A stretch of DNA of 64,000 nt. Origin: Macrostomum lignano. Lineage: Eukaryota. Positions 2 through 62,545 of this stretch are shown in pieces. Both the position numbers and the translations under genes were made by a program. The first letter of the stretch is position 1, and the number at the start of each line of letters is the position of its first letter. Under the pieces are notes generated by a model, which was given only the letters and a program-made list of their open reading frames with translations, had not been told where the DNA came from and did not search any database. The stretch covers positions 248,001 to 312,000 of the forward strand of contig NIVC01000449.1 in assembly GCA_002269645.1 (NCBI GenBank). The letters are read 5' to 3'.

Positions 2-1249
2 GAAGCTCAGCGGGCTCGGCTTGAGCGCAAACGCGCTAAACAACGCGCCAAAAGGCAGGCCAAGAAGGGAGCTGCGGGGGCCAAAGCGGCGGCGTCCACC
101 ATGGATGCTGAAGCGACTGGAGTCCCAAGGCAACCAGGCGGGCCGGCCGGTGGAAGCTCCAGTAGTTCAGCGGCGGCGCTCCCTGGAGCTGCTGCCGCGG
201 CTGCTGAGGCCGAAACCACGGCGCAACAAATGGCCACTGCCAACAAGGAGGTTCCTTCGGGAGCTACCTTTGCGGCGAAGGCCAAGGCCAAAATCCCGGG
301 AGTGATCATCCAAGGTCGCGACCAGGACTGGACCACTGATCAGCTTCAAAAAGTGTGGAGTGCTGTTGACTCCTATCTGATTGAGCTGACTGTCGAGGAG
401 GGAATCTCCATCGGCATTGAGCGGATGGTGCTGCGAAGCACATTCGTTCTTATTGCTCCTAGCAGCGAGGAGGACGCTCGGCGGCTGCTCCAGCGGCTAC
501 CGACGGTCTCCTTGGATGCTGACCTTGGCGGAGCTCTTTTTCTTCGCGAGGGCCAGCGTCCAAAGACGATACCCTATGTGGTTTTCGTCCCTGCTAAGAG
601 CACCGCAGCTGGACCAGACGTTATTCGCCGGGTCCTACTGCGTCTGAACCCCGACCTCCCTGCTAGTGGACTGGTGTATCACCGTAAAGTCCGCAGGGGG
701 GAGACGGGCAACTCAATTGTCCTCGGCCTTTCCAGCACTTGGGCGAGTCGGTACCCTAATGGATCCTCTTTCCAGCTGGGTGCCCTCAAGCTCAAGATGC
801 GCCGAGGAAAGTCTGCCAAAGGGAAGGCTACTGCCAACCCCGGCATCTCCGGCAAGAGCGGGGCGCAGTCTAAGGCCCAAGGAAAGGCGCAAGCCGATCC
901 CAAAGCCAAAGCTGCATCTCGCCCCTCTGCTAGCAGCAGTTCGGCGACCGCGGTAACGGCTCCGGCCAAGCCCCGGGAACCAAACCTGCCAGTCGGAGAA
1001 GGAGTTGAGGACGAGGCCGGGTCTTCGGAATCCGAGCTCTCCTCGGCCACCTTGGTGGGGTCTGAAGGTAAAGATGCAGGTGAGGAAGCTTCCTCCATCC
1101 TGTCATCGGAGCCTGAGGACTCTGCTGGGGGGGCCGGTGGGGGTGAGGAGGCCATGGACGTCGACCAACTCCCATCTCCCAGTCAAGCCCCAGCGGCCTG
1201 GGACGAGGACGATCTGTTGTCCAAGTCTCCTTATGGCCCGGGGCTCTAG
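2..1249 (+). CDS. LINE ORF1 (nucleic-acid chaperone, low-complexity termini; core resembles the DUF4780-type ORF1 of LOA elements)
   Basis: Frame is open from position 2 (EAQRARLERKRAK...) through the ATG at 101 to TAG at 1249; it ends 23 nt before the ORF2 ATG. No CCHC knuckle. DUF4780 resemblance is from memory of the pattern RVLLRLNPDLP. Confidence 0.8.
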   Translation, partial: EAQRARLERKRAKQRAKRQAKKGAAGAKAAASTMDAEATGVPRQPGGPAGGSSSSSAAALPGAAAAAAEAETTAQQMATANKEVPSGATFAAKAKAKIPGVIIQGRDQDWTTDQLQKVWSAVDSYLIELTVEEGISIGIERMVLRSTFVLIAPSSEEDARRLLQRLPTVSLDADLGGALFLREGQRPKTIPYVVFVPAKSTAAGPDVIRRVLLRLNPDLPASGLVYHRKVRRGETGNSIVLGLSSTWASRYPNGSSFQLGALKLKMRRGKSAKGKATANPGISGKSGAQSKAQGKAQADPKAKAASRPSASSSSATAVTAPAKPREPNLPVGEGVEDEAGSSESELSSATLVGSEGKDAGEEASSILSSEPEDSAGGAGGGEEAMDVDQLPSPSQAPAAWDEDDLLSKSPYGPGL

Positions 1250-1272
1250 CCAGCTATTGCATTTAGTACAGT

Positions 1273-2934
1273 ATGACTAAGCTCCACGCTGCCAAAGGAG
1301 TGACATTCTGTCTGCAAATTAATTTACAGCATTGCGTATCTGCGTCAGTAAATCTGATGAAGATTGCTGAGCTGTACAGGCCAGGCCTCATCCTGATCCA
1401 GGAACCCTGGATGCGCAACGGTAAGTTGCCCAACATTCCCTCTGGCTACTCTGATTTTTATGTGTGTGGCCCGGGGAACAGCCGCCCTAGAGCGGCTATC
1501 CTCGCTGCTAGCCATCTCCAGGCTTGGCTGAGGACTGATCTCTCTGATGGAGACCTTTGCGTCATCCAATCTAATCATTTCTCTCCGCGTACGTGTCTTG
1601 TTGCCTCGGTTTATATCCCAGGCGACAGAGACCCTGCTCCTGAGAGTTTACTGCGCCTCGCGCAGTACTGCGAGTCCCAGAACGCTGAGCTGTGCTTAGG
1701 GGGTGACCTCAACGCGCACCACAAGCACTGGGGCAGCAAAGATACCAACACTAGAGGAGAGGAGCTTCTGGCCCTCATCTCTAACACAAACCTCATGCTC
1801 TGCAACCGCGGCAGCACTCCTACCTTTAATAATGGCAGATGGACCGAGGTCCTCGACGCCACACTCGTTACCCCAAGACTCTTTGACAGAGTTGAGGAGT
1901 GGAGAGTCTGGTCTGAGGAGCCCTCCCTGTCTGACCACTGCTTTATCGCCTTTAACATCGCGGACACTAAAACCCAGTCTCCGATCACTTGGAGACGCAA
2001 TATCCGCAACACTGATTGGGCGGCCTACAAGGCTGCCCTTGATCTGCACCTGCAGGAACTCACGGACTTACGTCCGGACTTACGATTGAGACCTGCGAGG
2101 ATGTGGATCATATGGCTGAGACGCTGACAGGTTGCATTATTGAAGCCTACGAAGCGGCTTGTCCTGCTCGCGCCTACAAAGGCAAGACCTCGGCGCCGTG
2201 GTGGAACCCGGAGCTGGGGAAACTCAGGCGGAAGGCCAAAAGCCGTCATCGCCGTGCCATGAAGACCGGAAACCCGGAGGACATGGAGCTTTTCCGGCAA
2301 GCCTCCCGCAATTTCAAATCTGAAGTGCGCAAGGCCAAGGAATGTAAAGTGGCGCCAATTCTGCAATGAATTGGATCAAGACAGACCTACTTCTAGGCTT
2401 GTCAAGGCCCTTACAATGGACAAAATGTCCAAATTAGCCATGATAAAAAAAGATGATGGCTCTCTTACTAAAGACCCTGAAGAAGTGCTTCAGCATATGC
2501 TTAGCACATTCTTCCCGAGGGTACCTACTGCTAGACCGGAGCCCAACCATTCGATGGATGGAGCCACCCTAGCGGCGGGCATTGTCACTGAAGACCTAAT
2601 CGCTCGTGCGGTCAGAACCTTCAAACCCTTCAAATCTCCTGGACCTGATGGTATCTACCCTGTTCTCCTTCGTGAAGCAGTCAAGATACCCTCGTTCCTG
2701 AGACTCACCCGCAATCTCATGCGGGCCTCTATCCAGCTGGGATACGTTCCCAAATGCTGGACTGAAGCTCGGGTAGTCTTTATTCCCAAACCTGGGAAGG
2801 GTGACTACCAAAGCGTCAAGGCCTTCCGGCCTATTAGCTTAACGTCAGCAATGCTTAAGCTCACTGAGAGGCTTATTCTCTGGCGGCTGCTGTCCTGCGA
2901 GCTGACAGCGATGCCCCTCAGCAATAATCAGCAC
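1273..2934 (+). CDS. LINE ORF2, N-terminal part: APE endonuclease and start of reverse transcriptase (two +/-1 frameshifts near 2070 and 2346)
   Basis: LILIQEPW, GDLNAHH, LDATL, SDHCFI (APE motifs); PWWNPEL, KSPGPDGIYP, ARVVFIPKPGK, FRPISLTS (RT domains 0-2). Confidence 0.92.
2930..2934. repeat. 5-bp target site duplication AGCAC, left copy (right copy 9405-9409)
   Basis: AGCAC directly flanks both outer LTR ends; removing LTR-to-LTR plus one copy restores NNQHAFRTGRSTDSAL in frame. Confidence 0.95.
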
Positions 2935-3190
2935 TGTTAAAGAAATAATTAAGTCTAATAAATCTGAGGGTTAGACTTTAACAAAAAAACAGGTAAATGA
3001 GCCCTGTGGCTAAATTATTGCATATATATTAAATTAAATCGATGTTCTCTCTCTCCAACCCTCTAACTCATCAACGCCTCACGCACATCAACCCCACCCC
3101 AACACACTCTGAGACGGGGACCGCCAAGTGTACACTGGCGACGCTACACATAGCAGAGGGTCGGTACGCAGGCACTCCAAATCCAACACA
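2935..3190 (-). repeat. 3' LTR (256 bp)
   Basis: Identical to 9149-9404 except two C/T differences; TG...CA ends. Confidence 0.96.
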
Positions 3191-3198
3191 CTCCCCCT
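3191..3198 (-). promoter_or_regulatory. Polypurine tract AGGGGGAG
   Basis: CTCCCCCT on the plus strand directly abuts the 3' LTR. Confidence 0.9.
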
Positions 3199-3543
3199 AA
3201 TGATGCTTCATCATTACAGTACTTAACATTGATATTCGAAAAAGGAAACTCGCTATTAACTTAAATGAAATTAAACGAAACGAATAGCAAAAAACAAATG
3301 AACAACAAAAAACGCTCCAACATTACAACAGACTTGATGACTAAAAATGTGACACACCATCACCAGAGTACTGAGTTAACGAAAAAGTAGGAACAAAGGG
3401 AAAACGAAACTCAAAAAAAATCCAATCAGCGCTAAGGAGCTCAAAAGGTAAGATTGAAAGGGAGTGAAAATTACTGCGAACTAAAACTAAACAGAAACTC
3501 GAAACAACGATTAGAACAGTCATTGAAAGTCAGTTACTTAAGT

Positions 3544-6500
3544 TCATTCAGTCACAGCTTCCAGCAAAATCAGGTTCTCCACCGGTCGGCGAATCAAGCA
3601 TCTCCTGGGACCGCGGCCAGGTCTGGGCGCGACTCGAACCGTTGCAGATCTCACCGCCCCGTCTCGGCCAGGATGCACCGACTCGATGACACCGGTACAC
3701 CAGGTAAGCCTCGGCTGCCCGGCCTCACCTTTCACCAGGACGATGTCGCCGGCCGTCGCTTCTCGAGTTACGCCATGCTTGGGACTTAGATTATGTTCTC
3801 GCAGGCTGGTCAGATACTGTCGCTCCCAGCAGTCCCAGAAGGCTTGCAGTCTGGCGCGCATTCGCCTCAGCAGTGTTGGCAACGGCAGCAGGAGCTCGGG
3901 CGTACCGCTAGAAGTTGGCTCCGCCGTCAGCCGTTGCAGGACCAGAAAGTGCGCCGGCGTCAGGACTTCTCCGTTGGTTTCGGCATCCACGTAGAGTAGA
4001 GGCCGACTGTTGAGCACCGCTTCCACCTCCATTAGCACTGTCCGCAGTTCGTCCAGCGTCAGGGTTGCGTTGAGGATGGTCTTGCGCAAAGCCAGCTTGA
4101 TGTCCCTCATCAGTCGCTCCCAGAAGCCTCCTTGCCACGGTGCGCGTTCGACGATGAATTGCCAGGTGATTTTCCTGGTGGCGCAGAAGTCTTGAACTTG
4201 TCGACTCTCCGACGCCTGAAGTATTTTGGCAGCCTTGGTGAATGTCTTGGCGTTGTCACTGATGAGATTGGGAATTCCTCTCCGAGCACAGAACCGTCGG
4301 AGGGCTCGCAGGAAGGTCTCGGTCGTCAAGTCGCTCACCAGTTCCAGGTGAAGGGCTCGCGTGGCCGCACAGGTGAAAACCAGGATATAGCCTTTCTCGA
4401 TCTCTGTGTCCTCCATCAGTTTGACAGGTCCGCAGTAGTCGAGTCCGCACCACTCAAAGGCTCTCCCAGACTTCACGCGTGCTTCAGGTAAGGCTGGGAT
4501 TTGCTTCACTGCATATGGTAGTCCTTGAAGACGTCTGCAGACAAAGCAACTTCTCAGGATCGACTTGACTCGCTGTCTTCCTCTGATTAGCCAGAATCTC
4601 TCTCGCAGCTTACAAAGAGTGCTGGGCACTCCCCCGTGCAGAACCTTGGCGTGAGCGTCCCAGATGAGAAGAAGCTCCAGGTGTGACTTGCTCGGGATCA
4701 GAATCGGACAGTCAACCTCGGCAGAGGCGTTGGACTCCTTCAATCGACCTTGGCTTCGGAGAATACTCTTGTTGTCGAGAAAAAGATTCAACTGCCTGCT
4801 GAGATCTGTACTGGCCGCTGACTCCTGAATGTGAGCAATTTCGGCTTGAAAACTCCGTCTCTGCACTTCTCGCAGCCAGCGCTCTTCAACTTCAAGGACT
4901 TCTGCTGCAGCCAGTGGTCCCACTCGCTCCTCCCCCGCTGCAGAAGTTCTAGCTTGCAGGTTTCTGACGAAGCGTAGGACATAGGCTGTCACCCGAATCA
5001 GCTTGATCCAGGATGAGAAGTTCGTGTCATTGAGAACTTCCTGTAGACTGATGTCAGGACCGGCTTCAGTTAGCAGAACAACTGGACGGTTCACTTGTGT
5101 CTTTTGCTCCTCGGCAACTGCCGCTGTCGGTAAGCTGAGAAAGGATTGGTCGGGCCAATCGTCAGGAGGTCGTGCCAGCCAGTCTGGACCGTGCCACCAG
5201 CTGTCGTCCGCCTTCAACTTGCTCGCTGATGTTCCTCGAGATGCAACGTCCGCCGGATTCTCCTCGCCTGGGACATGTCTCCAGGCATCCTCTGGCACCA
5301 GGCGGCGGATCTCCGTCACCCGATTATGAACAAAGAGCTTCCAGGGTCTGTGCTGCCGGATCCAGTAGAGCGTGTCGGCACTGTCTGTCCAGCAAAACAC
5401 CTGGCGAACATGAGGATACTGACTCATGGATGATGTCAACAGTCTGGCGAGTATCAAGGCACCCAGGAGTTCGAGCCGAGGAATTGAAAGAACCGACAGT
5501 GGAGCCACTCTCGCCTTGGCGGCCACCAGGTTGCAGCTGACGGAACCATCGGTGTACTGCACTCGCAGGTAAAGACACGCCGCATAGCATTTGATTGACG
5601 CATCACAGAACCCATGCAGCTGTATCTCCTCGACCTCCTTCGTCGCCGAAAGCACCAACCTTGGAACTTGAAATCGACCTGCCAGCATCTCCTGCAACCA
5701 CTTCAGCCACTGCTGCTTAATCGGCTCCTTTAGCGGGCAGTCCCAAGCGATCTTTTCAACGCACAGCTTCTGGAACATCGATTTCGGCAACGTAAGCAGC
5801 GGAACCAGGAAGCCCAGAGGATCGTAGACACGGGCCAGCAGCTGTAGCACGACACGCTTGGAGGGCGACGCCTTGAGCAAATCTTCTGGCGGAGAAAACT
5901 GCAGCACGAACACGTCCGATCCTGTCTCCCATCGCAGCCCGAGGACTTTTGACGATACGCCATCTTCGCCCAAGGAGGCGGCTGAATAGCTGGAGGGGTC
6001 CTCCGTGATGTCCTTTGTCACCGCCGACAACGCCGGAGCAAGAACATCACTGTCTAGTGTGCTGGCGCGAACCGCTTTCAATACATTCTTGCTGTTGGAC
6101 TGCCAGTGTCGCAGATTCATTCCAGCCTGTTGGAATATGTGCCGGGATTTTTGGATGAGATCCAGGGCCTGCTGTTCATCCACGCACCCAGAGATCAGGT
6201 TGTCCACATAGATTTCTTTGGACACCTTATCCACGAACTCTGCATGCTGGCCTCGGTGAGATGCCAAGTGGTGTTGAATGACAGTCTCCAGGACGGCAGG
6301 TGAGCAGGTGAGTCCGAACACCAGAGCAGCGTAGCGCAGAACAACGAGAGGTGAATCAGCTTGACTGGGATCCCGTGGCCAGAGGAATCGTAGAGCATCG
6401 CGATCGTCTTCTGCAATTCGGATCTGCAAAAAAGCCTTCTCAATATCGGCAGTCAAGGCGATCGGATGAAGTCGAAATGCCTGAAGCAGTCGCGGAATCT

Positions 6501-9019
6501 CGGCCAACGAACAGGTTCCTGTTTCCAGACAGTCATTCAGCGATGGACTGCACTGATCTCGCTTGGCACTCGCGTCGAAAACCACTCGAACTTTGCTCGA
6601 TTCAGCTTCAGGACGGATTACGGCTCGGTGGGGTAGGTAGTGGATGAGATCGCTGGTCCCATCTGGAGCTTCTTCGACTACGCCAGCTTCCTTCTGACTG
6701 GTCAGAATGCGGTGGTACTCCTGAAGTAGCGCAGGCTCACGACGCAGCCTCGTCAGATTGGTCTTTAGTCTCTTGAACGCTACCTCGAAGTTGTCGGGCA
6801 ATCTTAATTCCTTTTTGGGAATCTTCCACGGCAGCTGAACTGAGTAGCGACCCTCTTGGAACTGGGCATTCAGAGTCAGTGGACGCTGATCAGGCTCGGC
6901 TGCACTTCTGATGCCGAGACCTTCTAAAGTCCAGAACGCCTCGATGGTGCTGCTGTCCAGACCTTTCTCGCTCCTTGAGCACAGCAGAGAAGAACCTGCT
7001 CTGACCTGGTCTCTAGCTCACTTGCGGCGAACCCATCTGACAGTGACCCGCACAGCAACCAACCGAGCTGACTGGATACGGCAACTGGACCGGAGCCGAC
7101 CTCTGAGCGAATCACTTGACCTGTGACGAGGTCGTAGAATTGGTCAGCTCCGATGAGGATACTGATCTCGGGATTCTGTTCACCACCGATGTCCCAGTCT
7201 GCCATGTCGAGGTGTTGAAAGTGCTTCATGCACAAGCTGCTGACAACTGGCTGATGAGAGCAGATGTAAGGCACTGTGTTGGCGCGCACTGTGAACTGGG
7301 CGGTGCTGTCAGATTTCCGAAGCTTGAACTCGACCATCGCAGTCTGCAGCACCTTGGCCTCTGTGCCACCGAATGTTGTCACCTCCATCGTCTCTCTGCC
7401 CATGACCTGGAGCCCCATCTTCTCAGCCAAGCTGGTCAAGATGAACAAACGGTTGCTTGCAGAGTCAAAGAGAATTCGCACCGGAGTCTCCTGATTGTTA
7501 ACAGTCGAAATCAGTACAGCTCCCGCTGTTGGAAGGATCACTGTTTGAGCTTTTGTCACCATAGCCATGGTCTTCACTTCTTGACTCTTCACATTCTGTG
7601 CAGCAGCCTGCTCGGACTTCTTCCGGTCTTCTCCCACCTTTCCAAGTGTGGAGCCGGGTGCCTTCGGTCCACCTTACCCTGCAGCTTCTCCATGCGTGCG
7701 CTACAGAGACTTGGGTGATGCTTCATCTGGCAGAATTCACATTGCTTCTTGTGGTAGCAGGTCTTGACGCTGTGTCCCTTGCAGAGACAGCTGAAGCAAC
7801 GCCTCTGCTCCTTCAAAAACTGGAGTCGTGCCGCAACGTCTACCAGGCGAGTGCACTTCTCTGGAGCATGTTCAGTTTCGCAGAAGGGACAAGCCGTGCT
7901 GATCTTTTTGACCTTCGTGTGAAGCGCAGCCACTGTGCCGCCATCCCTTGTCTGTTTCTCACCAGCAGTCTTGGACGCTCCATTGGAACCGGACGTCTGC
8001 CCTGCAGCTCCAACGGCCGCCTCCTCCCGGACTAAAATCTCCATTTCCAAGACCTGCAGAAACTCCGTCACAGAATCTAAGCCATTGCCATCCTTCATCT
8101 GCGACAAGCTGCTACCAAAGGAATAACCGACGGAAGCAATCCGAGCAGTTCTCAGCATCCCGAGACGAACGACTTCCGGCAGCTTCGCCAGCAAGTTGGG
8201 CAGCAACATGGATTCGTAAGATTCGACACTCACCCCGAGATTCGTCAGACTGCGGACATTTCCATTGACTTGGTCGTAGAAATTCCTCAGGTGCTGTGCC
8301 GACGAACTGGAGCAGGTCAGCACCGAGAACTTTGCCAGGTGCTCGCGCACGGCTCCGTTGCGGGATCCAAATCGTCGTTGCAGGTTGTCGATGGCGATAT
8401 GGTAGTTGTCCTTCGTGATGTTGAGACCAGCGATCGAGTTTCGGGCTTCCCCAGACAGACACGACTGCAGGTAGCTGAATTTGTCGACGACACTCAGGCT
8501 CGGGTTGTCATGGATACTGGAGTTGAAGCGGTCCCAGAATTCCGTCCATTGGGTCCGATCGCCACTGAATGACGGTGGCGGCAGTTTTGGCAACCTGATG
8601 GCAGTCTGAGTCCTTGTCGTTGAAGAATTCTCTTCCGAAGACTTGGACGAAGTCGTCGTCTGTATGGCTGTATTCTGCAGCAGATTTGTTGCCTGCGGCG
8701 TGCCGGTCCGCGCGGTCTGAAGCTCCTGGAGCCGTCTGGTGAGGTTCGAGATCAATTTGCCAGCCAGCAGGTCGTACTCCATTGTCGTCTCTGCTTCAGC
8801 CTGCACGTCCTTCTCGTCAACCTCCGCGGCGAGCTCTTCATCTGCTGCTTGGAGCTGCTGCTTCTTGAACCGTAGAGCCTCTAGAACGCTGTCGATTTCA
8901 TCTTCAGCAGCATCTGTTTTGAGCAGGTCTTCGGCTTTCTGTGCCAGTCTGGTGACCGTCGCTCGTAACACGCCTCTCTTCCTGGAGTCCATGCTGTTGT
9001 TGAAAAATCGCTGAGTCAC
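3544..9019 (-). CDS. BEL/Pao Gag-Pol polyprotein, split by two -1 shifts (ORFs 7589-9019, 6924-7637, 3544-6801)
   Basis: Domain order Gag-PR-RT-RH-IN. The span is 5476 nt; adding two bases (G-run sites near 7672 and 6975) gives one 1826-codon frame and restores FWTLEGLGI before RT. Confidence 0.92.
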
Positions 9020-9060
9020 TGTAGCACTCTTGCGCTCACTGCTTGATTTTACTGTGATTT

Positions 9061-9074
9061 TGGTTCGGGCGCCA
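9061..9074 (-). promoter_or_regulatory. Native PBS, 12-nt match to tRNA-Lys(UUU) (TGGCGCCCGAAC)
   Basis: Reverse complement of 9063-9074 is TGGCGCCCGAAC, which then diverges into the leader CAAAATC. Confidence 0.85.
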
Positions 9075-9130
9075 TGTTAAAGAAATAATTAAGTCTAATA
9101 AATCTGAGGGTTAGACTTTAACAAAAAAAA
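9075..9130 (-). repeat. Extra partial LTR copy: 56-nt U5 end
   Basis: TGTTAAAGAAAT...TTTAACAAAAAAAA matches the first 55-56 nt of both LTRs on the plus strand. Confidence 0.95.
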
Positions 9131-9148
9131 GTCCCTGTTCGGGCGCCA
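9131..9148 (-). promoter_or_regulatory. Perfect 18-nt PBS complementary to the tRNA-Lys(UUU) 3' end (TGGCGCCCGAACAGGGAC)
   Basis: Plus strand GTCCCTGTTCGGGCGCCA equals nt 59-76 of canonical tRNA-Lys3 (the same sequence as the HIV-1 PBS). Confidence 0.93.
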
Positions 9149-9404
9149 TGTTAAAGAAATAATTAAGTCTAATAAATCTGAGGGTTAGACTTTAACAAAA
9201 AAACAGGTAAATGAGCCCTGTGGCTAAATTATTGCATATATATTAAATTAAATCGATGTTCTCTCTCTCCAACTCTCTAACTCATCAACGCCTCACGCAC
9301 ATCAACCCTACCCCAACACACTCTGAGACGGGGACCGCCAAGTGTACACTGGCGACGCTACACATAGCAGAGGGTCGGTACGCAGGCACTCCAAATCCAA
9401 CACA
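9149..9404 (-). repeat. 5' LTR (256 bp)
   Basis: 254/256 identical to the 3' LTR; followed by TSD AGCAC. Confidence 0.96.
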
Positions 9405-9409
9405 AGCAC

Positions 9410-11495
9410 GCCTTCCGCACCGGGAGGTCGACTGACAGCGCCCTGCATGCGATTGTCGAGAAGATTGAAAGGGCGGTACTGGGTGACGGTTACGCTCTGG
9501 CTCTCTTTCTTGACATTGTTGGCGCCTTCGACAACGTTATCTTTGAAGCGTTTCAGAGGGCCCTTCAAAATCGCAAAGCTCATGCTACCCTCATACGGTG
9601 GATCATGTACATGATCTCCAACCGTACGGTCACTGCCCAACTTCTTGGGCAAACTGCCTCCACCAGAGTCTGTAAGGGTGGACCCCAAGGCGGAGTCCTC
9701 ACCCCGACGCTCTGGAACCTGGTCATGGACGCTCTTTTGAGTGACTCCCGACCCGCCCCGTCTTCAAAGTCGGGTATGCTGATGACGTCACGGCCATTGT
9801 GGCAGGACCGTCTCCCAGCACGCTCAGGGATCTGATGCAGAGCTTTATCCGCAAAGCAGAATCCTGGGCCAATGACAATGGTCTGGAACTCTCTGAGCCC
9901 AAAACCGTTGCCATTATGTTTACCAGCAGACTACGCTGGAACATACGTCCTCTGCAGCTCTACGGCAGAGATATTGCCTTCGCGCACCAGACCAGATGTC
10001 TCGGGTCACACTTGACCACCGGCTCAACTGGTCCTTCCACGTGAAAGCAAAAGCCAAGCGTGCCTCAGCCATCCTGGCCCAGCTCCGACGAGCACTTGGC
10101 ACTTCTTGGGGTCTATCCCCAAAGCGGCTTTGGTGGATCTATACTTCCGTAGTTAGACCTGCCATTACGTACGCCTCTGTTGTCTGGGTTAGCGCTACCC
10201 AGGTCAAAAGCCATGCAGACCTGCTCAACACGATCCAAGGCAGAGCGTGTAGGCTCATCTGCAACGCCACCAGGTCCACGCCCTTTGCTGGCATGGGGGC
10301 CTTCCTTAATCTTCCGCCTCTTGACCTCTTCATCAGGGGTGAGGCGGCTAGAACGACGCGGCGTCTAATTGATGCCGGCGTCAAATTCATTTACATGAGA
10401 GCACCTGCTAAGCGGAACCTTGTCCCGCATAGCGATCTGTGCCTCAACTTTCTCAACGAGTGTCAGGCCAATCGCGTCTTCACCGATGGCATTGCCTCAA
10501 CGCTCAACCTGAGACAGCGCTACTCCGTAGCTATTGACTCGCGCGATAACATCAATGACCATTGGAACCCTGGTGAGCTTCATTGCTACACCGACGGTTC
10601 TAAGCAGTCAGCCAACACCGGCTTTGGTGTTGGAATCTTTCTGAACGGGAGGGTCATCGCTACCCACGCTCAATACACTGGGGTCAACTCCAGTGTTTTC
10701 CAAAATGAAGTTCTGGCCATCAGCTCCTGCACTGCAGAGCTTCTCGCCACTGGCGTTACTGGTAAGAACATCATTTTCCATTCGGACAGCCAAGCTGCCT
10801 TGCACGCCATCAGTGGCTGCAGCACCAACTCTGCTACAGTCCTTGACTGTATCAAACTCCTCAATGTGTTGGGTTCCGCCAACAAAATTACCCTTAAGTG
10901 GGTTCCGGGGCATGTGGGGATCCGAGGAAATGAGTTGGCTGACACCCTTGCAAAAGTTGGTGCCTCCGGCTCCTCTCTCGGCCCCGAACCTCTTGTCCCG
11001 ATTCCTGGCTGTGTCATCGACTCACGCATCAAAGCGTGGATCAGGACTCAGCACCGCTCGACTTGGGCGAACCGCACGAACTGCAGGCAATCCAGAGGCG
11101 CTGTCCCTCAGCCCTCTCACCAGCTCCGGAAGCTCCTCTTGCGCCTCTCGCGCAGAGACATCCGGGCTGCCACCATGACCCTCTCTGGTCACGGCTGCTT
11201 CTCCAGGCACCAGTACCTGCAGGGCAACGCCACCAACGCCACCTGTAGTTTCTGCAACTCAGGTGACGAAACCGCTGAGCATTTCGTCAGCATCTGTCCC
11301 GCCTTCACGCGGGCCAGACTCACTTACCTCGGGCCACACACATCTATTACTGAAGCGTGCAAACCCGAAAACTTTAATCAGCTCATGCGCTACCTTCGGG
11401 CCACCCGCAGGGCTGAACTCTCCTTTCCAGAGAGCACCATAGCTGCTGGCGACACTGGGGGACCTCCCTGGGCGGCGCCAACCCTCCGTCCATAG
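9410..11495 (+). CDS. LINE ORF2, C-terminal part: RT core, RNase H, CCHC zinc finger (two -1 shifts near 9756 and 10005)
   Basis: FLDIVGAFDNV, GGPQGGVLTPTLW, GYADD; RNase H YTDGSK...QNEVLAI...SDSQAAL...WVPGHVGIRGNELAD; GHGCF...CSFC...ETAEHFVSICP. Confidence 0.92.
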
Positions 11496-11826: not shown

Positions 11827-11973
11827 CAGTCAGTCAGTCAGTCAGTCAGTCAGTCAGTCAGTCAGTCAGTCAGTCAGTCAGTCAGTCAGTCAGTCAGTCA
11901 GTCAGTCAGTCAGTCAGTCAGTCAGTCAGTCAGTCAGTCAGTCAGTCAGTCAGTTAGTCAGTCAGTCAGTCAG
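11827..11973. repeat. (CAGT)n microsatellite
   Basis: About 36 near-perfect CAGT units. Confidence 0.97.
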
Positions 11974-14989: not shown

Positions 14990-15515
14990 GATAAGCCAAG
15001 GATTACTGCACTTGAAAAACCAAGGATTATTGCACTTTATGAGTAAATGATCATTGCACTAGATGAGAAGAGGATTATTGCGCTAGCTGAGACATGGTTT
15101 ATTGCACAACCTGAAAAAGCGATTATTGCATTAGCTGAGAAAATATTTGCATTAGCTACTTGCTGTCGGGTGGATGCTTGCTATCTGAGGGGATGCTTGC
15201 TATCTGCGGTTGATTACTCTTGGAGGGGGGATACTTGCTATCTGGGGGATGCTTGCTATCTGCGGTTGATTACTCTTGGAGGGGGGGGTGCTTGCTATTT
15301 GGGGGATGCTTGCTGTCTTGGGGATATTTTCTATTTAGGGGAATGTCTGCTATCTTTGAGAAAGCTTTATTTTGTCGTCTTTGTTAATGTTAGTAAAAAA
15401 GAGATTCATAGCAAACATCTGGAAAGATGCTTGCTATCTGGGGGATGCTTGCTATCTGGGGGATGCTTGCTATCTGGGAGGATGCTTGCTATCTGGGGGA
15501 TGCTTGCTATCTGGG
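14990..15515 (+). mobile_element. Partial non-autonomous Helitron-family copy with internal 18-bp GGATGCTTGCTATCTGGG array
   Basis: Homologous to 48150-48720 and 49480-50060 (ATAAGCCAAGGATTA..TGCAC, GGTTTATTGCACAACC, GATGCTTGCTATCT arrays). Confidence 0.65.
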
Positions 15516-15517
15516 AG

Positions 15518-15718
15518 AGTCTCTTGGTGGGCGCCCCTGTCTCTTGGTGGGCGCCCCTGTCTTTTTGTGGGTGACCCTGTCTCTTGGTGGGCGCCCCTGT
15601 CTTTTTGTGGTCGCCCCTGTCTTTTTGTGGGCGCCCCTGTCTCTTGGTGGGCGCCCCTGTCACTTGGTGGGCGCCCCTGTCTCTTTGTGGTCGCCCCTGT
15701 CTCTTAATTGGCGCCCAT
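15518..15718. repeat. 20-bp minisatellite (CTCTTGGTGGGCGCCCCTGT)n
   Basis: About 10 tandem units. Confidence 0.93.
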
Positions 15719-16533
15719 ACCCATAATCTCCTGGATAGGTGGATGCCATGTCAAAGATGTGGCAAAAGTTGAGTTCCTGCATTGTTTCAGTTTAGTTATC
15801 TCTTTCATTTAGTTTTTAAAGTAGCGCAGAGTTGTTGTGGTGGCAGTGATGAGGCTGCCCCAAATTCGGTAAGTGACTCCAGCCAGTGCTGTAAAAGCTT
15901 TGGAAATTGTGCTACACAGTTCTGCTTTGTGTGATGCATTTTCTTCATTTAGGAAAACCGATGAGTTGTTCGAGCTGAAGCGACTGTTTGATGAAGGAGA
16001 TTTGGCTGGTCTGAGGAAGGCGGCAACTCGATTCAACTGCGACATTCCCAATCTAATGGGCCGCACCCTGCTGTTCTCTGCAGCACAGAGCGATGCTCCA
16101 ATTGACATACAGACTTAGAAGCTACTTCTGAATCTGGGAGACCCCACTGTAATGGGCAGCATCAAAGAAGGCAGTCTGGTGCACTATGCAGCTGGATACG
16201 GGAGCCTCCGCCAACGCAAGAAGTCCTAAAACCGAATGCACGGCCCTCATGCAGCTGGTGGACAGACGGTTGGCTGCACTCGAATTACTGGGATTCTGCG
16301 CTGGACATCGTCAGGGACAACGAAAAAGCCTCCACTGACTCCTGAGCACAACCAAGCGCGTCAATGCTGTCCGCAGGCACGGCACTCATACACACACTCA
16401 CACAGGGTGTACAGCAACACAGACTTTCTAATAATCGACCCGGGATCATGGCGCAAGAATCAGACGCGTTCAGCGGTTTAAGTTTATCCCTTTAATTTGC
16501 TTTGACCCAATTTGAACTGCTGAATTTTATCAT

Positions 16534-22404: not shown

Positions 22405-23790
22405 ATAGATTGTGTATATGGTTTTGGAGGTAGACAATGATAAATTTTTCACGAGTGGCGAAGCCACGAGTGACTAAAATTTATCATTGTCTATGACAAA
22501 ACCATATACACAAACACATTGTCTCATGAATGTATTTTTAGAAGCCTAAAATAATGATTCCTAAGCGTGGAATAATGAGCGTACAGCATGACACAATGCG
22601 CTTTTATATACGGTGTTGCCAAGCCTTCAAATTTCATCAGCACGTCAATCACATGTGACTGAATAATTTCTGACTTCCGCGGCCAACAGCCTTCACCTAA
22701 TCAAAACCATAGACACAAATCTACTATTGTCTACCTTTAAAACTATAGAAAAAATTTACCATTGTCTGCCTCCAAAACCATAGACAGCACAATCTACCAT
22801 TACCTGCCTCCAAAACCATAGACACAATCTACCATTACCTGCCTCCAAAACCATCGACACAATCTACCAATACCTGCCTCCAAAACCATAGACACAATCT
22901 ACCATTACCTGCCTCCAAAACCATAGACACAATCTACCATTACCTGCCTCCAAAACCATAGACACAATCTACCATTTTCTGCCTCTAAAACCATAGACAC
23001 AATCTACCATTACCTGCCTCCAAAACCATAGACACAATCTACCAATTCCTGACTCCAAAACCATAGACACAATCTACCATTATCTGACTCCAAAACCATA
23101 CACACAATCTACCATTATCTGACTCTAAAACCATAGACACAATCTACCATTATCTGACTCCAAAACCATAGACACAATCTACCATTACCTGACTCCAAAA
23201 CCATAGACACAATCTACCATTACCTGACTCCAAAGCCATAGACACAATCTACCATTACCTGCCTCTAAAACCATAGACACAATCTACCGTTGTCTGCCTT
23301 CAAAACCATAGACGCAATCTACCATTACCTGACTCCAAAACCAAAGACACAATCTACCATTGTCTGCCTCCAAAACCATAGACACAATCTACCAATTCCT
23401 GACTCCAAAACCATAGACACAATCTACCATTATCTGACTCCAAAACCATACACACAATCTACCATTATCTGACTCTAAAACCATAGACACAATCTACCAT
23501 TATCTGACTCCAAAACCATAGACACAATCTACCATTACCTGACTCCAAAACCATAGACACAATCTACCATTACCTGACTCCAAAGCCATAGACACAATCT
23601 ACCATTACCTGCCTCTAAAACCATAGACACAATCTACCGTTGTCTGCCTTCAAAACCATAGACGCAATCTACCATTACCTGACTCCAAAACCAAAGACAC
23701 AATCTACCATTACCTGCCTCCAAAACCATAGACACAATCTACCATTGTCTGCGCTGCTTAAAAAACCACAGAGACAATCTACCATTATAA
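22405..23790. mobile_element. Non-autonomous palindromic element whose right terminal repeat is amplified into a 35-bp minisatellite
   Basis: About 100-bp hairpin at 22411-22512 centred on GTGGCGAAGCCAC; array (AAAACCATAGACACAATCTACCATTACCTGCCTCC)n at 22700-23790 is the reverse complement of the left terminus. Confidence 0.65.
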
Positions 23791-24262
23791 AGTAAGAAAG
23801 CATATGTGCAATTCAAGTACGAGGTCGATTAGTTTGAAAAAACTATTTATAATAATAGCTGTATTTTCTAAACCGGTTCCAAAAAGATTCCTTTTCTTTC
23901 GCATTGCGTTGAATAAAGAATAGTATAAAAATCAACAAAGGACGTTAAAGTAACTTTAATTTCGCCGTAAAGTTTGCGGTTTCAAATATTACTTTTAATG
24001 GTAACAAGAAAGCTGTCAAACTCTTACGGAAACAACAAAAAACTCGGTACGCTCGTATCTCACCCGAACGTCTAAATATAATCCAACCAAATTCCGCCAA
24101 TGGTGAGAAGATCCAAGCTGATTGGTTATAGTAAGCTGAAAAATCATCGCTTCTAGTAGCTCGTACTCCAGTAGTTATAAAATCCAAAACCAAATCTGAA
24201 ATTCTTCAAACAACAGACTTAAGAGTTAATAATCGCCAAAAAACATAACTGTGTGCTTGTCA

Positions 24263-24982: not shown

Positions 24983-25261
24983 GGGAGAACGCGTTTGACT
25001 TGCGCTGACATGAGCCTGCTGTCGATCGATATAACTCTGAGTACTAATGAGACTTCAATTTTAAATCGAGTCACTGAGATAAAAAAGTTTGAATTTTAAA
25101 TAAAACGACCCTTTATTCATTGCAATTGGTTAAGACCAAAGTCTACCAAAAAACTATATCAATGAGTGACTTTTTTTACTGACTCTCAAATACGAGTATA
25201 GTCTTGCAACAACTATGAATGGATTCAATAAAACTAAACGCTTTTTGGGCGCCAAAATGGG

Positions 25262-26045
25262 GGCTGACTGTGCACAAAAATGAGTGACTGTGGCACAAAA
25301 ATGAGTGACTGTGGCACTAAAATGAGCGACTGTGCACAAAAATGAGTGACTGTGGCACAAAAATGAGTGACTGTGGCACAAAAATGAGTGACTGTGGCAC
25401 AAAAATGAGTGACTGTGGCACAAAAATGAGTGACTGTGGCACAAAAATGGGTGACTGTGGCACTGAAATGAGTGACTTTAGCACAAAAATAGGTGACTGT
25501 GCACTAAAATAAGTGACTGTGGCACTAAAATGAGTGACTGTGGCACTAAAATGAGTGACTGTGCACTAAAATAAGTGACTGTGGCACTAAAATGAGTGAC
25601 TGTGGCACTAAAATGAGTGACTGTGCACTAAAATAAGTGACTGTGGCACTAAAATAAGTGACTGTGGCACTAAAATAAGTGACTGTGGCACTAAAATGAG
25701 TGACTGTGGCACTAAAATGAGTGACTGTGGCACTGAAATGAGTGACTGTGGCACTAAAATGAGTGACTGTGGCACTGAAATGAGTGACTGTGGCACTGAA
25801 ATGAGTGACTGTGGCACCAAAATGAGTGACTGTGGCACTAAAATGAGTGACTGTGGCACAAAAATGAGTGACTGTGGCACCAAAATGAGTGACTGTGGCA
25901 CCAAAATGAGTGACTGTGGCACCAAAATGAGTGACTGTGGCACCAAAATGAGTGACTGTGGCACCAAAATGAGTGACTGTGGCACCAAAATGAGTGACTG
26001 TGGCACTAAAATGAGTGACTGTGGCACTATAATAAGTGACGCGGC
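25262..26045. repeat. 21-bp minisatellite (AAAATGAGTGACTGTGGCACT)n
   Basis: About 37 tandem units with minor variants. Confidence 0.96.
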
Positions 26046-26391
26046 ACTAAAATGAATGACTGTATGAATGAATAAATGTGGTGCCAAAATAAGTGAGTGT
26101 GATGAGTGGTAAATTGTGTTCGAACAGTTAGTATGGGAATTTTCCTGGAAATTTTTTAATGAAGAATTTAATAAATAATCAGTGAATAAAGGAGCCCTCA
26201 ATAATACCATATCATAGATACGTACGAGCTTATGCAATGTTTGGTCAGCAAAATTCTCATTGTTTCCGGCTTGTGCTGGGTATCAAATAACTATAAAGCT
26301 TATATTGACACAGTCTGAAGCCACGCTTTCTTACGGTGAATAATATTTATTGAGCACACCATGCAGATGTGCAACCGACAGCTCAGCCGCA

Positions 26392-26612: not shown

Positions 26613-27714
26613 TAGAAGCTCTTTTTTATCATTCCAGCTTACGAATGCCTACCATGCCTACCATTTTTTGCAAATTCTGCTCTATATTTACCCAAAGAGT
26701 TATCGATCTCAACACAACGCAACACAGAACTTTCCCATTATTCAAGTTTGCTCTGCATGTCGAAGAAAATTTCCGGTGTTGATGAGACAGCTTAAGGCAG
26801 GTTGATGAAGGTTCTCAAATAAGTGACAGTACTCCCGGGTTTAATAAAGCTTGACTGCTTTGTTTAACTAGACGAAATATTGACGGTACTCAATAAAATC
26901 TTGGCCAAAACTAAAAATTTGCATATTCTTGTCCACTAGATGACGATTTCACGAGTTGACAATTTTTTCATGAGGTAAAAGCTTCTCAGGGCCAAAATTT
27001 CATGAGCAAGCTAGGAATTGAACCTACCGTCGAACGACTTTACCTGCACTCTCAAAAATGGCTACCACAGACGGAATCTTCTGTGATGGCGAGTCTTTGA
27101 TGTTGCTGAGTTTAGTTTTAGTTTCAGTTTCAGTTTTAGTTTTAGTTGCTGGGTCAATTGACAATGAATCTGGATACTGCAGTTGGTGCCCAAACAGTTT
27201 TATACAGAATTGTAGCTAAACTCGTGCAAATTCCGTTATGGTCAGTTGTTCCCAATCCAAACCCAGGCAGGTTAGGCTTTATGATTTGAGCATAATTCAG
27301 ACCAGGTTGTAAAATTCAAATAAGCGATCTACATGTAGCAGCTGCTTTAGTTATGAGAGTTGGCATCCAGCATTGGGTTGGTGCGACATGCAAACATTTA
27401 TCTTGGCAACTGCAAACTCTGATATTTAACACCGATCCTGTTGGTGCTGACTAAAAGCTTTCCCGGTGCGTTCAGTTTTTGTGGACGCTGCAAAGGGGAG
27501 AACTTATCTTAATTGAAATTCAAATTACGCTCGTAGTAGTCTGCTAAATCATTTACCTAATCTTTAAAGGCTTATGGGGAAATCGCTAAGATGCTAAGAA
27601 TCACCCATGGTATTAGGAGTAGGGTTTAGGGTCAGTTTTGGGGTTAGAGTTGGGGCTCAATCATAGAACAACTCATAGAATAATCGCCGTGTCAATCATA
27701 AAATATGGCGGAAG

Positions 27715-28790
27715 GCTGTCGGCAGCGGAGAGGTCACTGAGTGTGGCAGCGGTCAGGTCACTGAGTGGGGCAGCGGTCAGGTCACTGAGTGGGGCAGCGG
27801 TCAGGTCACTGAGTGGGGCAGCGGTCAGGTCACTGAGTGAGGCAGCGGTCAGGTCACTGAGTGGGGCAGCGGTCAGGTCACTGAGTGAGGCAGCGGAGAG
27901 GTCACTGAGTGAGGCAGCGGAGAGGTCACTGAGTGAGGCAGCGGAGAGGTCACTGAGTGAGGCAGCGGAGAGGTCACTGAGTGAGGCAGCGGAGAGGTCA
28001 CTGAGTGAGGCAGCGGAGAGGTCACTGAGTGAGGCAGCGGAGAGGTCACTGAGTGAGGCAGCGGAGAGGTCACTGAGTGAGGCAGCGGAGAGGTCACTGA
28101 GTGGTCGTAGCGGAGAGGTCACTGAGTGAGGCAGCGGAGAGGTCACTGAGTGAGGCAGCGGAGAGGTCACTGAGTGAGGCAGCGGAGAGGTCACTGAGTG
28201 AGGCAGCGGAGAGGTCACTGAGTGAGGCAGCGGAGAGGTCACTGAGTGAGGCAGCGGAGAGGTCACTGAGTGAGGCAGCGGAGAGGTCACTGAGTGGTCG
28301 TAGCGGAGAGGTCACTGAGTGAGGCAGCGGAGAGGTCACTGAGTGAGGCAGCGGAGAGGTCACTGAGTGGTCGTAGCGGAGAGGTCACTGAGTGAGGCAG
28401 CGGAGAGGTCACTGAGTGGGGCAGCGGTCAGGTCACTGAGTGAGGCAGCGGTCAGGTCACTGAGTGAGGCAGCGGTCAGGTCACTGAGTGGGGCAGCGGT
28501 CAGGTCACTGAGTGGGGCAGCGGAGAGGTCACTGAGTGAGGCAGCGGATAGTTCACTCAAGGAGGCAGCGGAGAGGTCACTGAGTGGTCGTAGCGGAGAG
28601 GTCACTGAGTGAGGAAGCGGAGAGGTCACTGAGTGAGGCAGCGGAGAGGTCACTGAGTGAGGAAGCGGAGAGGTCACGAGTGGTCGTAGCGGAGGGGTCA
28701 CTGAGTGAGGCAGCGGAGAGGTCACTGAGTGAGGCAGCGGAGAGGTCACTGAGTGAGGCAGCGGAGAGGTCACTGAGTGGGGCAGCTGTG
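27715..28790. repeat. 24-bp minisatellite (GGTCACTGAGTGAGGCAGCGGAGA)n
   Basis: About 44 units, with periodic GGTCGTAGCGG variant units. Confidence 0.96.
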
Positions 28791-29421
28791 AACCCACATA
28801 GCATAATAATGTAATATACTTTTGTACCAATTCGTATTAAGGACAAATAAATTCACAATCCAATTCAAATTCATGAGATAGCAATTGACAAAAGTTGATT
28901 CAATTATGTCTTAAATGTAATTTTTCATTGCTAAAAATGTCTTGATTGCAAAAAGTTGAAAGATGCTTTCAAACAATAAACAGCAGTACGTACTGTACTT
29001 TCTTGTAAACAATCCAGTCATGAATACAAATATAAATAAATACATGAATAAATCTGATTGTACAGTCGATTTGTCGGGCGTGCGCAGTCTGTAAAAATGT
29101 GCAATTGTATATAATCATGATACAAAAACAATAATGGACTACAAAATCAAAATCAGATTAGGAGGAAGCAAAGCATAGCTAAGTTTAAAGCTTGGCAAAA
29201 AATTGGTTGCAAAAATTGGACACAACAAAAAAATGGAAAAATATTGCACTTGCAAGTGTGAGCCATGGCATTGCAAAATGGCGATTGGAATGATTCAAAG
29301 AAATACCGTTTTGTACCACTTTATCAATCAAAAAGACGTTTTTATCGAAGACATTTATCAGATTTCGAGTAGAACTTTAAATAAACTTGGCAGGGGTCAA
29401 ACATTCATTTAGGTTCTGAGT

Positions 29422-62512: not shown

Positions 62513-62545
62513 CTGCGGTGAGGTGTGATACAGGCAGGTCAAAAT

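What the first reader, a model, noticed from the sequence alone, without database searches (positions are those of the whole stretch)
9061..9148. Tandem U5-PBS cassette containing an 18-nt direct copy of the primer tRNA: likely fossil of an aberrant plus-strand transfer
Seen in sequence (element sense): 5'LTR - TGGCGCCCGAACAGGGAC (18 nt) - 56 nt of U5 ending in CA - TGGCGCCCGAAC (12 nt) - leader. The inner PBS matches tRNA-Lys(UUU) for only 12 nt, but the outer one matches all 18 nt up to position 59. Established: plus-strand strong-stop DNA copies the primer tRNA up to m1A58, giving exactly 18 nt. Inference: the extra AGGGAC was templated by the tRNA itself and joined to a minus strand that had run 56 nt into U5. 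The A-run has 8 A versus 7 in the LTRs, which would fit A57/A58 microhomology. The result is two complete priming cassettes and an internal LTR end. If other copies carry one or more such units, this would be a heritable, expandable tRNA-primer cassette.
Basis: partly seen in the sequence, partly recalled or inferred. Interest (0 to 1): 0.8.

Follow-up and report, generated by a model that had tools for sequence, protein, structure and literature searches.

The report
Duplicated tRNA primer site in retrotransposon
One inserted copy of a BEL/Pao retrotransposon carries its tRNA-primer landing site twice, and the extra six bases in the outer copy look as if they were copied from the tRNA primer itself; this is a small, real fossil of a reverse-transcription mishap, not a new kind of system.

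Summary
A 6,470-bp BEL/Pao LTR retrotransposon lies on the minus strand at 2935-9404, with 256-bp LTRs and a 5-bp target duplication. After its 5' LTR come an 18-nt PBS (TGGCGCCCGAACAGGGAC), a 56-nt repeat of the U5 end, a 12-nt PBS (TGGCGCCCGAAC), and then the leader.

It is not a plain tandem duplication. Two exact 67-nt repeats are separated by a 7-nt filler, AGGGACT. Six of those bases extend the tRNA-Lys(UUU) match from 12 to exactly 18 nt.

The nearest relative found (60% Pol identity) has a single 13-nt PBS. Two of five more distant Lys-primed relatives have 13-14 nt and three have 18 nt. So the inner, short PBS looks ancestral and the outer extension looks tRNA-templated.

The best explanation is an aberrant plus-strand transfer. 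Similar tRNA-insert products are documented in defective HIV-1 proviruses, but there they create deletions; here the result is a duplication.

Not supported: any sign that the cassette is heritable or expandable. The window has no other copy, the public collections searched hold no family member, and nine relatives each have one PBS. The family census, raw reads and host tRNA could not be checked. This copy also has two reading-frame breaks.

Interest is moderate.

The parts
2930..2934 (.). Target-site duplication, left copy (AGCAC on the + strand)
   Evidence: Same 5 bp at 9405-9409. Joining the flanks restores an open non-LTR RT reading frame.
2935..3190 (-). 3' LTR, 256 bp, TG...CA. It ends normally, with no PBS or extra U5 attached.
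   Evidence: family D7. 2 differences in 256 from the 5' LTR.
3191..3200 (-). Polypurine tract (sense TTAGGGGGAG) directly 5' of the 3' LTR
   Evidence: Sister element L001 has GGGGGAG|TGTAGTGG at the same place.
3544..6987 (-). Pol: RT, Pao A17 region, integrase, DUF5641. It is in a different frame from the protease.
   Evidence: Pfam. tblastn with P0001: residues 650-1799, frame 3.
6924..7637 (-). Protease region (DUF1758 / Asp_protease_2), in its own frame. Frame changes lie near 7703-7562 and 7038-6987, whereas relatives have a single ORF.
7589..8992 (-). gag (DUF1759), ATG at 8992
   Evidence: The N-terminus aligns with P0001.
8993..9062 (-). Leader between the inner PBS and gag (sense CAAAATCACAG...)
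9063..9074 (-). Inner PBS, 12 nt, TGGCGCCCGAAC; likely the element's native short PBS
   Evidence: L001 has the same 12 nt plus A, followed by an A-rich leader.
9075..9130 (-). Extra copy of the last 55 nt of U5 plus one extra T (T8 against T7). It includes the U5 hairpin (9091-9118) and an internal LTR end ...AACA.
9131..9148 (-). Outer PBS, 18 nt, TGGCGCCCGAACAGGGAC. Its last 6 nt (9131-9136), plus the T at 9130, form the 7-nt filler between the two 67-nt repeats.
   Evidence: The 18-mer equals the published tRNA-Lys3 PBS.
9149..9404 (-). 5' LTR, 256 bp. U5 hairpin at 9165-9192; T7 run at 9197-9203; TATA-like motif near 9242-9235.
9405..9409 (.). Target-site duplication, right copy (AGCAC)

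Best explanation
The tandem U5-PBS arrangement is a by-product of reverse transcription, made either in the cycle that produced this copy or in a recent ancestor.

Proposed sequence of events:
1. The family's own PBS is short, 12 nt.
2. tRNA-Lys(UUU) primed minus-strand synthesis.
3. Plus-strand strong-stop DNA copied the LTR and then the first 18 nt of the attached tRNA, up to the m1A58 block. It may have read one or two bases further (A58, A57 -> T, T).
4. Only 12 of those 18 nt can pair with the minus strand, so the 3' tail AGGGAC(T) is a flap and cannot be extended in the normal register.
5. The minus-strand 3' end meanwhile ran 55-56 nt past the PBS into U5. It did this either by copying the strong-stop DNA, which is the normal next step, or by copying undegraded RNA. 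It stopped at the U5 homopolymer run.
6. The two 3' ends then abutted with 0-2 nt of T/A overlap, and each was extended on the other.
7. The product was LTR - PBS18 - T8...U5 end - PBS12 - leader, which integrase inserted normally.

Shown: the anatomy, the 7-nt filler, its match to the tRNA, the short PBS in relatives, and a clean integration.
Inferred: every step of the strand-transfer pathway, and which reverse-transcription cycle it happened in.
For: 1. The structure is two exact 67-nt repeats plus a 7-nt filler, not a 74-nt perfect duplication. The flanks mismatch on both sides.
2. Six filler bases extend the tRNA-Lys3 match from 12 to exactly 18 nt. The chance for 6 given bases is about 1 in 4,096. 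No other template exists in the window.
3. The closest relative, L001 (60% Pol identity), has one PBS of 13 nt followed by an A-rich leader, like the inner cassette. L002 and L009 have 14 and 13 nt. So short PBSs are native to this clade. Read as a tRNA, the short versions would require U at position 61, which real tRNAs do not have (my knowledge).
4. Termination of plus-strand strong-stop DNA at m1A58, and proviruses carrying tRNA-Lys3 inserts from deferred second-strand transfer, are documented (PMC12657518).
5. The element is a bona fide integration: TG..CA ends, a 5-bp TSD, and an empty site that reads in frame.
6. The 3' LTR is normal. This fits priming at the outer or the single PBS and a rearrangement confined to the 5' end.
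Against: - This is one copy only. No other member of the family could be examined, so the ancestral 12-nt state is inferred from the inner copy and from a relative at 60% protein identity.
- Three Lys(CUU)-primed relatives have full 18-nt PBSs (L003, L004, L014), so 18-nt variants in this family are not excluded.
- The host tRNA-Lys(UUU) is unknown; the host is not identified, and the best named relative of a host-like exon is a trematode protein at 38% identity.
- The end-to-end joining step has no direct precedent that I could cite for BEL/Pao.
- T8 against T7 is a single homopolymer base and could be slippage or a sequencing error. The two frame breaks are compatible with either decay or indel errors in the assembly.
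Confidence: 0.6

Rival explanations
1. The family's normal PBS is 18 nt. An ordinary tandem duplication of U5 plus PBS was followed by a 7-nt deletion or other damage in the inner copy, so nothing was copied from the tRNA in this event.
For: Full 18-nt Lys PBSs exist in related BEL/Pao elements (L003, L004, L014). The family census is missing.
Against: - It needs two events, with the second removing exactly AGGGACT and leaving the other 67 nt untouched.
- The sequence after the inner PBS (CAAAAT...) resembles the A-rich sequence after the short PBS of the closest relative.
- Short PBSs occur in three related lineages.
Confidence: 0.13
2. Recombination or template switching between two co-packaged family variants, one with an 18-nt and one with a 12-nt PBS, produced the tandem. 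The 18-mer was inherited from an element, not copied from the tRNA in this cycle.
For: Both PBS lengths occur in the wider clade. Copy-choice recombination is common in retroelements (general knowledge).
Against: There is no homology at the GGGAC|T8 junction beyond a T run. It needs an unobserved 18-nt variant of this same family. Even then, the 18-nt variant itself would most simply descend from an earlier tRNA-templated event.
Confidence: 0.1
3. Assembly or sequencing artefact: the 74-bp repeat, or at least the T8 count, is not in the real genome.
For: The raw reads cannot be checked. The element shows two frame changes relative to single-ORF relatives, and indel errors in an assembly can also produce these.
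Against: An artefact would not be expected to insert a filler that completes a tRNA match. The two repeats are exact and sit inside unique sequence. The LTRs and TSD are coherent.
Confidence: 0.07
4. Host DNA replication or repair (slippage, or microhomology-mediated repair with a filler) duplicated 67 bp after insertion, and the filler matches the tRNA by chance.
For: Short tandem duplications with fillers do occur in genomes (general knowledge). The window is rich in tandem repeats.
Against: The chance of a 6-nt filler completing the PBS is about 2.4e-4. No local template for the filler exists. The repeat limits coincide with functional landmarks (the PBS and the U5 homopolymer run).
Confidence: 0.03

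Closest known systems
Aberrant (deferred) second-strand transfer products in defective HIV-1 proviruses (Commun Biol 2025, PMC12657518)
   Same: An intact 5' LTR and a full 18-nt tRNA-Lys3 PBS are followed by primer-derived bases and then a junction to a non-cognate position on the minus strand. The cause is poor complementarity between the plus-strand strong-stop 3' end and the minus strand.
   Different: In HIV-1 the insert is 7-54 nt of tRNA read through m1A58 (TTGAACC...), and the acceptor lies downstream, giving deletions. Here at most 0-2 bases lie beyond position 59. The novelty lies in the 6 bases that the element's own 12-nt PBS lacks. The acceptor is upstream, in U5, giving a duplication. 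The host element is a germline BEL/Pao retrotransposon, not a retrovirus.
PBS inheritance rules: Retroviridae inherit the tRNA copy on one strand; Ty1 and Ty3 do not (Lauermann & Boeke 1994 and 1997, as cited in PMC7472051 and PMC5371799)
   Same: The question is the same: does the tRNA-templated end of plus-strand strong-stop DNA reach the progeny? Short PBSs of 12-14 nt persisting in four lineages here resemble the Ty1/Ty3 situation.
   Different: No experiment exists for BEL/Pao. This copy suggests the enzyme does copy 18 nt of the primer, as retroviruses do, but that the copy is normally not passed on.
Engineered retroviral vectors with two primer-binding sites (Voronin & Pathak, J Virol 2004; reference seen in PMC4227088, paper not readable here)
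   Same: Two PBSs in one genomic RNA, with the possibility of initiation at either.
   Different: Those are designed constructs with long spacers. Here the second PBS arose naturally, is 74 nt away, and differs in length (18 against 12 nt). Whether either one primes is untested.
Extended primer-template contacts outside the PBS (HIV-1 U5 with the tRNA-Lys3 anticodon arm; Ty1 boxes, Friant 1996; Ty3 bipartite PBS, Gabus 1998; the last two cited in PMC5371799)
   Same: The loop of the U5 hairpin carries ACCCTCAGATT, complementary to nt 37-47 of human tRNA-Lys3. Each repeat unit therefore holds a possible second contact site as well as a PBS.
   Different: This is a post hoc observation (13 of 5,000 LTR shuffles reach 11 nt), it is absent from sister element L001, and the host tRNA is unknown.

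Membership tests
BEL/Pao (Belpaoviridae) LTR retrotransposon | Gag-PR-RT-RNaseH-IN polyprotein with Pao-type domains | tested here: met
   DUF1759, DUF1758, RVT_1, Peptidase_A17 (E 5e-47), Integrase_H2C2 and DUF5641. Pol is 60% identical to P0001 and 37-46% to many BEL/Pao polyproteins.
BEL/Pao (Belpaoviridae) LTR retrotransposon | Direct LTRs with TG...CA ends, short TSD, PBS next to the 5' LTR, PPT next to the 3' LTR | tested here: met
   256-bp LTRs, 254/256 identical. 5-bp TSD and an in-frame empty site. PBS starts at the base after the LTR's CA. PPT is GGGGGAG.
BEL/Pao (Belpaoviridae) LTR retrotransposon | Intact single gag-pol ORF (autonomous copy) | tested here: not met
   Three frames are used, with frame changes near 7703-7562 and 7038-6987, whereas relatives have one ORF of 1,731-1,804 aa.
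Aberrant plus-strand (second) transfer product | Complete 5' LTR followed by an 18-nt tRNA-complementary PBS | tested here: met
Aberrant plus-strand (second) transfer product | Bases present that only the tRNA primer could have templated | tested here: inconclusive
   AGGGAC is a filler absent from the inner PBS and from the closest relative's PBS. The family's ancestral state and the host tRNA were not available.
Aberrant plus-strand (second) transfer product | Read-through beyond m1A58 (TTGAACC...), as in the HIV-1 cases | tested here: not met
   After the 18-mer comes T8 and then GTTAAAG, which is U5 sequence. Only the first 1-2 T could be tRNA-derived.
Aberrant plus-strand (second) transfer product | Junction to a non-cognate site on the minus strand | tested here: met
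   The junction GGGAC|T8 joins the PBS to a point 55-56 nt inside U5. The outcome is a duplication rather than a deletion.
Plain tandem duplication (replication slippage) | Two adjacent units identical over the whole period, with no filler | tested here: not met
   Only 67 of 74 positions repeat, and 7 consecutive positions differ.
   No other family copy in the window or in the collections searched. Nine relatives each have one PBS. The host genome itself was not available.
   Needs mapping of VLP cDNA or strong-stop DNA.

The most novel reading that the evidence does not exclude
The tandem cassette is not a dead end but a transmissible variant. The outer 18-nt PBS, created by copying the tRNA, now primes more strongly than the native 12-nt site. 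Plus-strand transfer then pairs perfectly at the outer site, so the duplication is passed on. It would be a natural route by which short-PBS BEL/Pao elements lengthen or replace their PBS and grow their U5/leader.
Probability: 0.1. Interest if true: 0.6.

Novelty: new variant of a known kind. Interest (0 to 1): 0.4.

Why it matters
How BEL/Pao elements carry out plus-strand transfer has not been studied experimentally, as far as I could find. Retroviruses pass on the tRNA copy of the PBS; Ty1 and Ty3 do not.

If this copy is read correctly, it is a natural record that a BEL/Pao reverse transcriptase copies exactly 18 nt of its tRNA-Lys primer, as retroviruses do, even though the element's own PBS has only 12 nt. 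It also shows what happens when that unmatched tail is not discarded.

It also gives a simple sequence signature, LTR - 18-nt PBS - partial U5 - short PBS, that could be searched across genomes to measure how often such accidents become fixed.

It does not change the current picture of retroelement replication.

Tried and rejected
- Gag protein search for close relatives: nothing at E <= 1e-20.
- U5/PBS junction 19-20-mer in viral contigs: 0 hits.
- The same pattern in JGI metagenomes: 2 hits, both chance matches in bacterial-looking, unrelated sequence.
- The same pattern in prokaryotic genome contigs: 0 hits.
- Pol alignment against IMG/VR: no BEL/Pao.
- Pol alignment against MAG contigs: only relatives at 32-39% identity. 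These were used for a small PBS survey.
- Self-BLAST of the element against the window: no further copy or solo LTR.
- Host identification from a LamG/EGF exon: best hit is a trematode protein at 38%, so the host is unresolved.
- tRNA search in the window: none.
- Literature search for natural PBS duplications: swamped by 'phosphate-buffered saline'. Lauermann & Boeke 1994 and 1997 and Voronin & Pathak 2004 are not held.
- Rejected idea: the strong-stop tail mis-annealed at the LTR's own ACAGGGC motif 12 nt upstream of the T run. The product would then contain CTCATTTACCTG, and it does not.
- Unresolved idea: the U5 breakpoint is the 5' end of the genomic RNA (run-off). The TATA-like motif near 9242 predicts a start near 9212, 9 nt upstream of the breakpoint.

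Full report
**What is there.**
The window holds a complete LTR retrotransposon on the minus strand, 2935-9404 (6,470 bp).
- The LTRs are 256 bp (3' LTR 2935-3190, 5' LTR 9149-9404). They start TG, end CA, and differ at 2 of 256 positions (family D7).
- A 5-bp target duplication flanks the element (AGCAC on the + strand, at 2930-2934 and 9405-9409).
- Removing the element and one copy of the duplication restores an open reading frame through a non-LTR reverse-transcriptase motif (...SNNQH|AFRTGRST...FLDIVGAFDNV). This is therefore a true integrase-mediated insertion into an older non-LTR element (EN domain at 1273-2127, RNase H within 9996-11495).
- The internal ORFs carry DUF1759 (gag), DUF1758/aspartyl protease, RVT_1, Peptidase_A17 'Pao', Integrase_H2C2 and DUF5641. 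The BEL/Pao assignment is correct.
- A purine tract, TTAGGGGGAG, lies directly upstream of the 3' LTR.

**The observation.**
In element sense, the 5' LTR ends ...TTTAACA. It is followed by:
- TGGCGCCCGAACAGGGAC (9148-9131);
- T8-GTTAAAG...TTTAACA (9130-9075, 56 nt);
- TGGCGCCCGAAC (9074-9063);
- the leader CAAAATCACAG..., with the gag ATG at 8992.

Tandem Repeats Finder reports period 74, 1.9 copies and 100% matches. The PBS 12-mer occurs nowhere else in 64 kb, and the U5 30-mer occurs only in the two LTRs and the extra copy. Both LTRs have 7 T where the extra copy has 8.

**It is not a plain tandem duplication.**
The repeated stretch is exactly 67 nt (9063-9129 and 9137-9203), and the two copies are separated by 7 nt, sense AGGGACT. 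The bases on either side of the repeats do not match (G against T upstream, A against C downstream). A simple 74-nt duplication is therefore excluded unless 7 consecutive bases changed later while the other 67 stayed identical.

Six of the seven filler bases extend the match to tRNA-Lys(UUU) from 12 to exactly 18 nt. The seventh, T, could pair with A58. The 18-mer is the published PBS for the 3' 18 nt of tRNA-Lys3 (PMC1084362). The tRNA continues ...TTGAACCCTGG in DNA sense (PMC12657518; full tRNA string confirmed). No other template for the filler exists in the window.

**Which PBS is ancestral?**
I could not find any other member of the family.
- The window has none.
- Exact-pattern scans of viral contigs, JGI metagenomes and prokaryotic genome contigs gave nothing, or chance hits in unrelated bacterial-looking sequence.
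- The protein database holds nothing closer than 60% Pol identity.

That closest relative is P0001, on contig L001, filed as a bacterial MAG. L001 has a similar PPT/LTR start (GGGGGAG|TGTAGTGG), a 268-nt LTR, and a single PBS, TGGCGCCCGAACA, followed by AAAGTGATCG-ATG. That is 13 nt of tRNA-Lys(UUU) and then an A-rich leader, as in the inner cassette.

More distant relatives (37-46% identity) use tRNA-Lys(CUU).
- L002 has a 14-nt PBS and L009 a 13-nt PBS.
- L003, L004 and L014 have 18-nt PBSs.

If the short versions were read as full 18-nt sites, the tRNA would need U at position 61, which real tRNAs do not have (my knowledge). They are therefore genuinely short. Short PBSs are native to this clade, and the inner 12-nt site with its leader is the likely original. 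This inference comes from relatives, not from the family itself.

**Mechanism.**
Two things are established for retroviruses. Plus-strand strong-stop DNA copies the LTR and then 18 nt of the primer up to m1A58. Poor complementarity at this step gives aberrant second-strand transfers, with tRNA-Lys3 inserts of 7-54 nt at deletion junctions in 44 HIV-1 proviral sequences (PMC12657518).

The rest is inference for this element.
- With a 12-nt PBS, the last 6 nt of the strong-stop DNA form an unpaired 3' flap.
- The minus-strand 3' end is paired and is extended into U5 in the normal way.
- If synthesis stalls at the U5 T7/A7 run and the duplex re-aligns, the two 3' ends can abut and each can be extended on the other.
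- The product is exactly LTR - PBS18 - T8...U5 end - PBS12 - leader.
- Read-through of A58/A57 (TT) with a 1-nt overlap would give 8 T. So would one non-templated base, or slippage. This detail cannot be resolved.

The 3' LTR is normal, so the rearrangement is confined to the 5' end.

One alternative version is that the minus strand ran off the 5' end of a second RNA. A TATA-like motif near 9242 predicts a start near 9212, 9 nt upstream of the breakpoint, so this stays open.

**What the clade suggests.**
Retroviruses pass the tRNA copy to half of their progeny. Ty1 and Ty3 strictly inherit their own PBS (PMC7472051; PMC5371799). PBSs of 12-14 nt persist in four Lys-primed BEL/Pao lineages here, which suggests the tRNA copy is usually not inherited. 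The outer cassette suggests the enzyme nevertheless makes that copy. This is a hypothesis from few sequences.

**Heritable or expandable?**
There is no evidence for it.
- All nine relatives with a readable 5' end have one PBS and one U5 end.
- Compared with single-ORF relatives, this copy changes reading frame twice: gag to PR near 7703-7562, and PR to RT near 7038-6987. It is either decayed or assembled with indel errors.
- On paper, an RNA with both sites could prime at the outer 18-nt PBS and regenerate the tandem. This is untested.

**Side observation.**
U5 folds into an 8-bp hairpin (AAGUCUAA / UUAGACUU) with a 12-nt loop. The loop and adjoining base read ACCCTCAGATT, complementary to nt 37-47 of human tRNA-Lys3, that is, the 3' side of the anticodon arm plus the variable loop. 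Only 13 of 5,000 shuffles of the LTR reach 11 nt. This resembles the extra primer-template contacts known for HIV-1, Ty1 and Ty3. However, it is post hoc, it is absent from L001, and the host tRNA is unknown. If real, each 74-nt unit is a complete two-part primer docking module.

**Comparison and novelty.**
The closest known phenomenon is the aberrant second-strand transfer seen in defective HIV-1 proviruses. The differences here are:
- the primer-derived bases are those the element's short PBS lacks, not read-through beyond m1A58;
- the outcome is a duplication, not a deletion;
- the element is a germline BEL/Pao retrotransposon.

I rate it a new variant of a known kind, of moderate interest. 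Its most exciting part, an expandable cassette, is not supported.

**Limits.**
There is no family census, no raw reads and no host tRNA, and the host is not identified (a trematode protein at 38% is the best named match to a host-like exon).

Noticed in passing
window 9165-9192, 9091-9118, 2951-2978 (minus strand): A U5 hairpin (8-bp stem, 12-nt loop) carries ACCCTCAGATT in its loop and adjoining stem base. This is complementary to nt 37-47 of human tRNA-Lys3 and could be a second primer contact site. It is present in both LTRs and in the duplicated unit, and absent from sister element L001.
   Followed up: partly
window 101-2934 and 9410-11495 (+ strand): A non-LTR retrotransposon (ORF1, endonuclease, RT, RNase H) is split by the BEL/Pao insertion. 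The RT frame reads through the restored empty site and then breaks further downstream.
   Followed up: partly
window 7562-7703 and 6987-7038 (minus strand): The BEL/Pao copy has two reading-frame changes (gag to protease, protease to RT) where relatives have one continuous ORF. The cause is either decay or assembly indels.
   Followed up: partly
L001-L004, L009, L014: Among Lys-primed relatives the PBS is 13-14 nt in three lineages and 18 nt in three. The nearest relative uses tRNA-Lys(UUU); the more distant ones use tRNA-Lys(CUU). This points to PBS switching between Lys isoacceptors and to variable PBS length within one clade.
   Followed up: partly
L001 (JGI 3300040801), L010-L019: BEL/Pao elements sit on contigs filed as bacterial or archaeal MAGs (Kangiellaceae, Stappiaceae, Nitrosopumilus and others). 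These contigs are most likely animal-host DNA binned by mistake.
   Followed up: no
window 11827-11970, 15159-15756, 22648-23892, 25223-26086, 27700-28915, 29786-30000: A dense series of micro- and minisatellites: (CAGT)n and arrays of period 18-20, 35, 21, 24 and 21 nt.
   Followed up: no
window 32306-33553, 38593-40155, 61886-62548 (minus strand): Host-like exons: EGF, Laminin G plus EGF (520 aa open), and the transmembrane region of a ligand-gated ion channel. The best named relative of the LamG exon is a Dicrocoelium (trematode) protein at 38%.
   Followed up: partly
window 56471-58642; 32001-36000: About 2 kb has long ORFs open in five or six frames at once, probably a stop-poor repeat. 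A 4-kb block has GC skew of +0.43.
   Followed up: no
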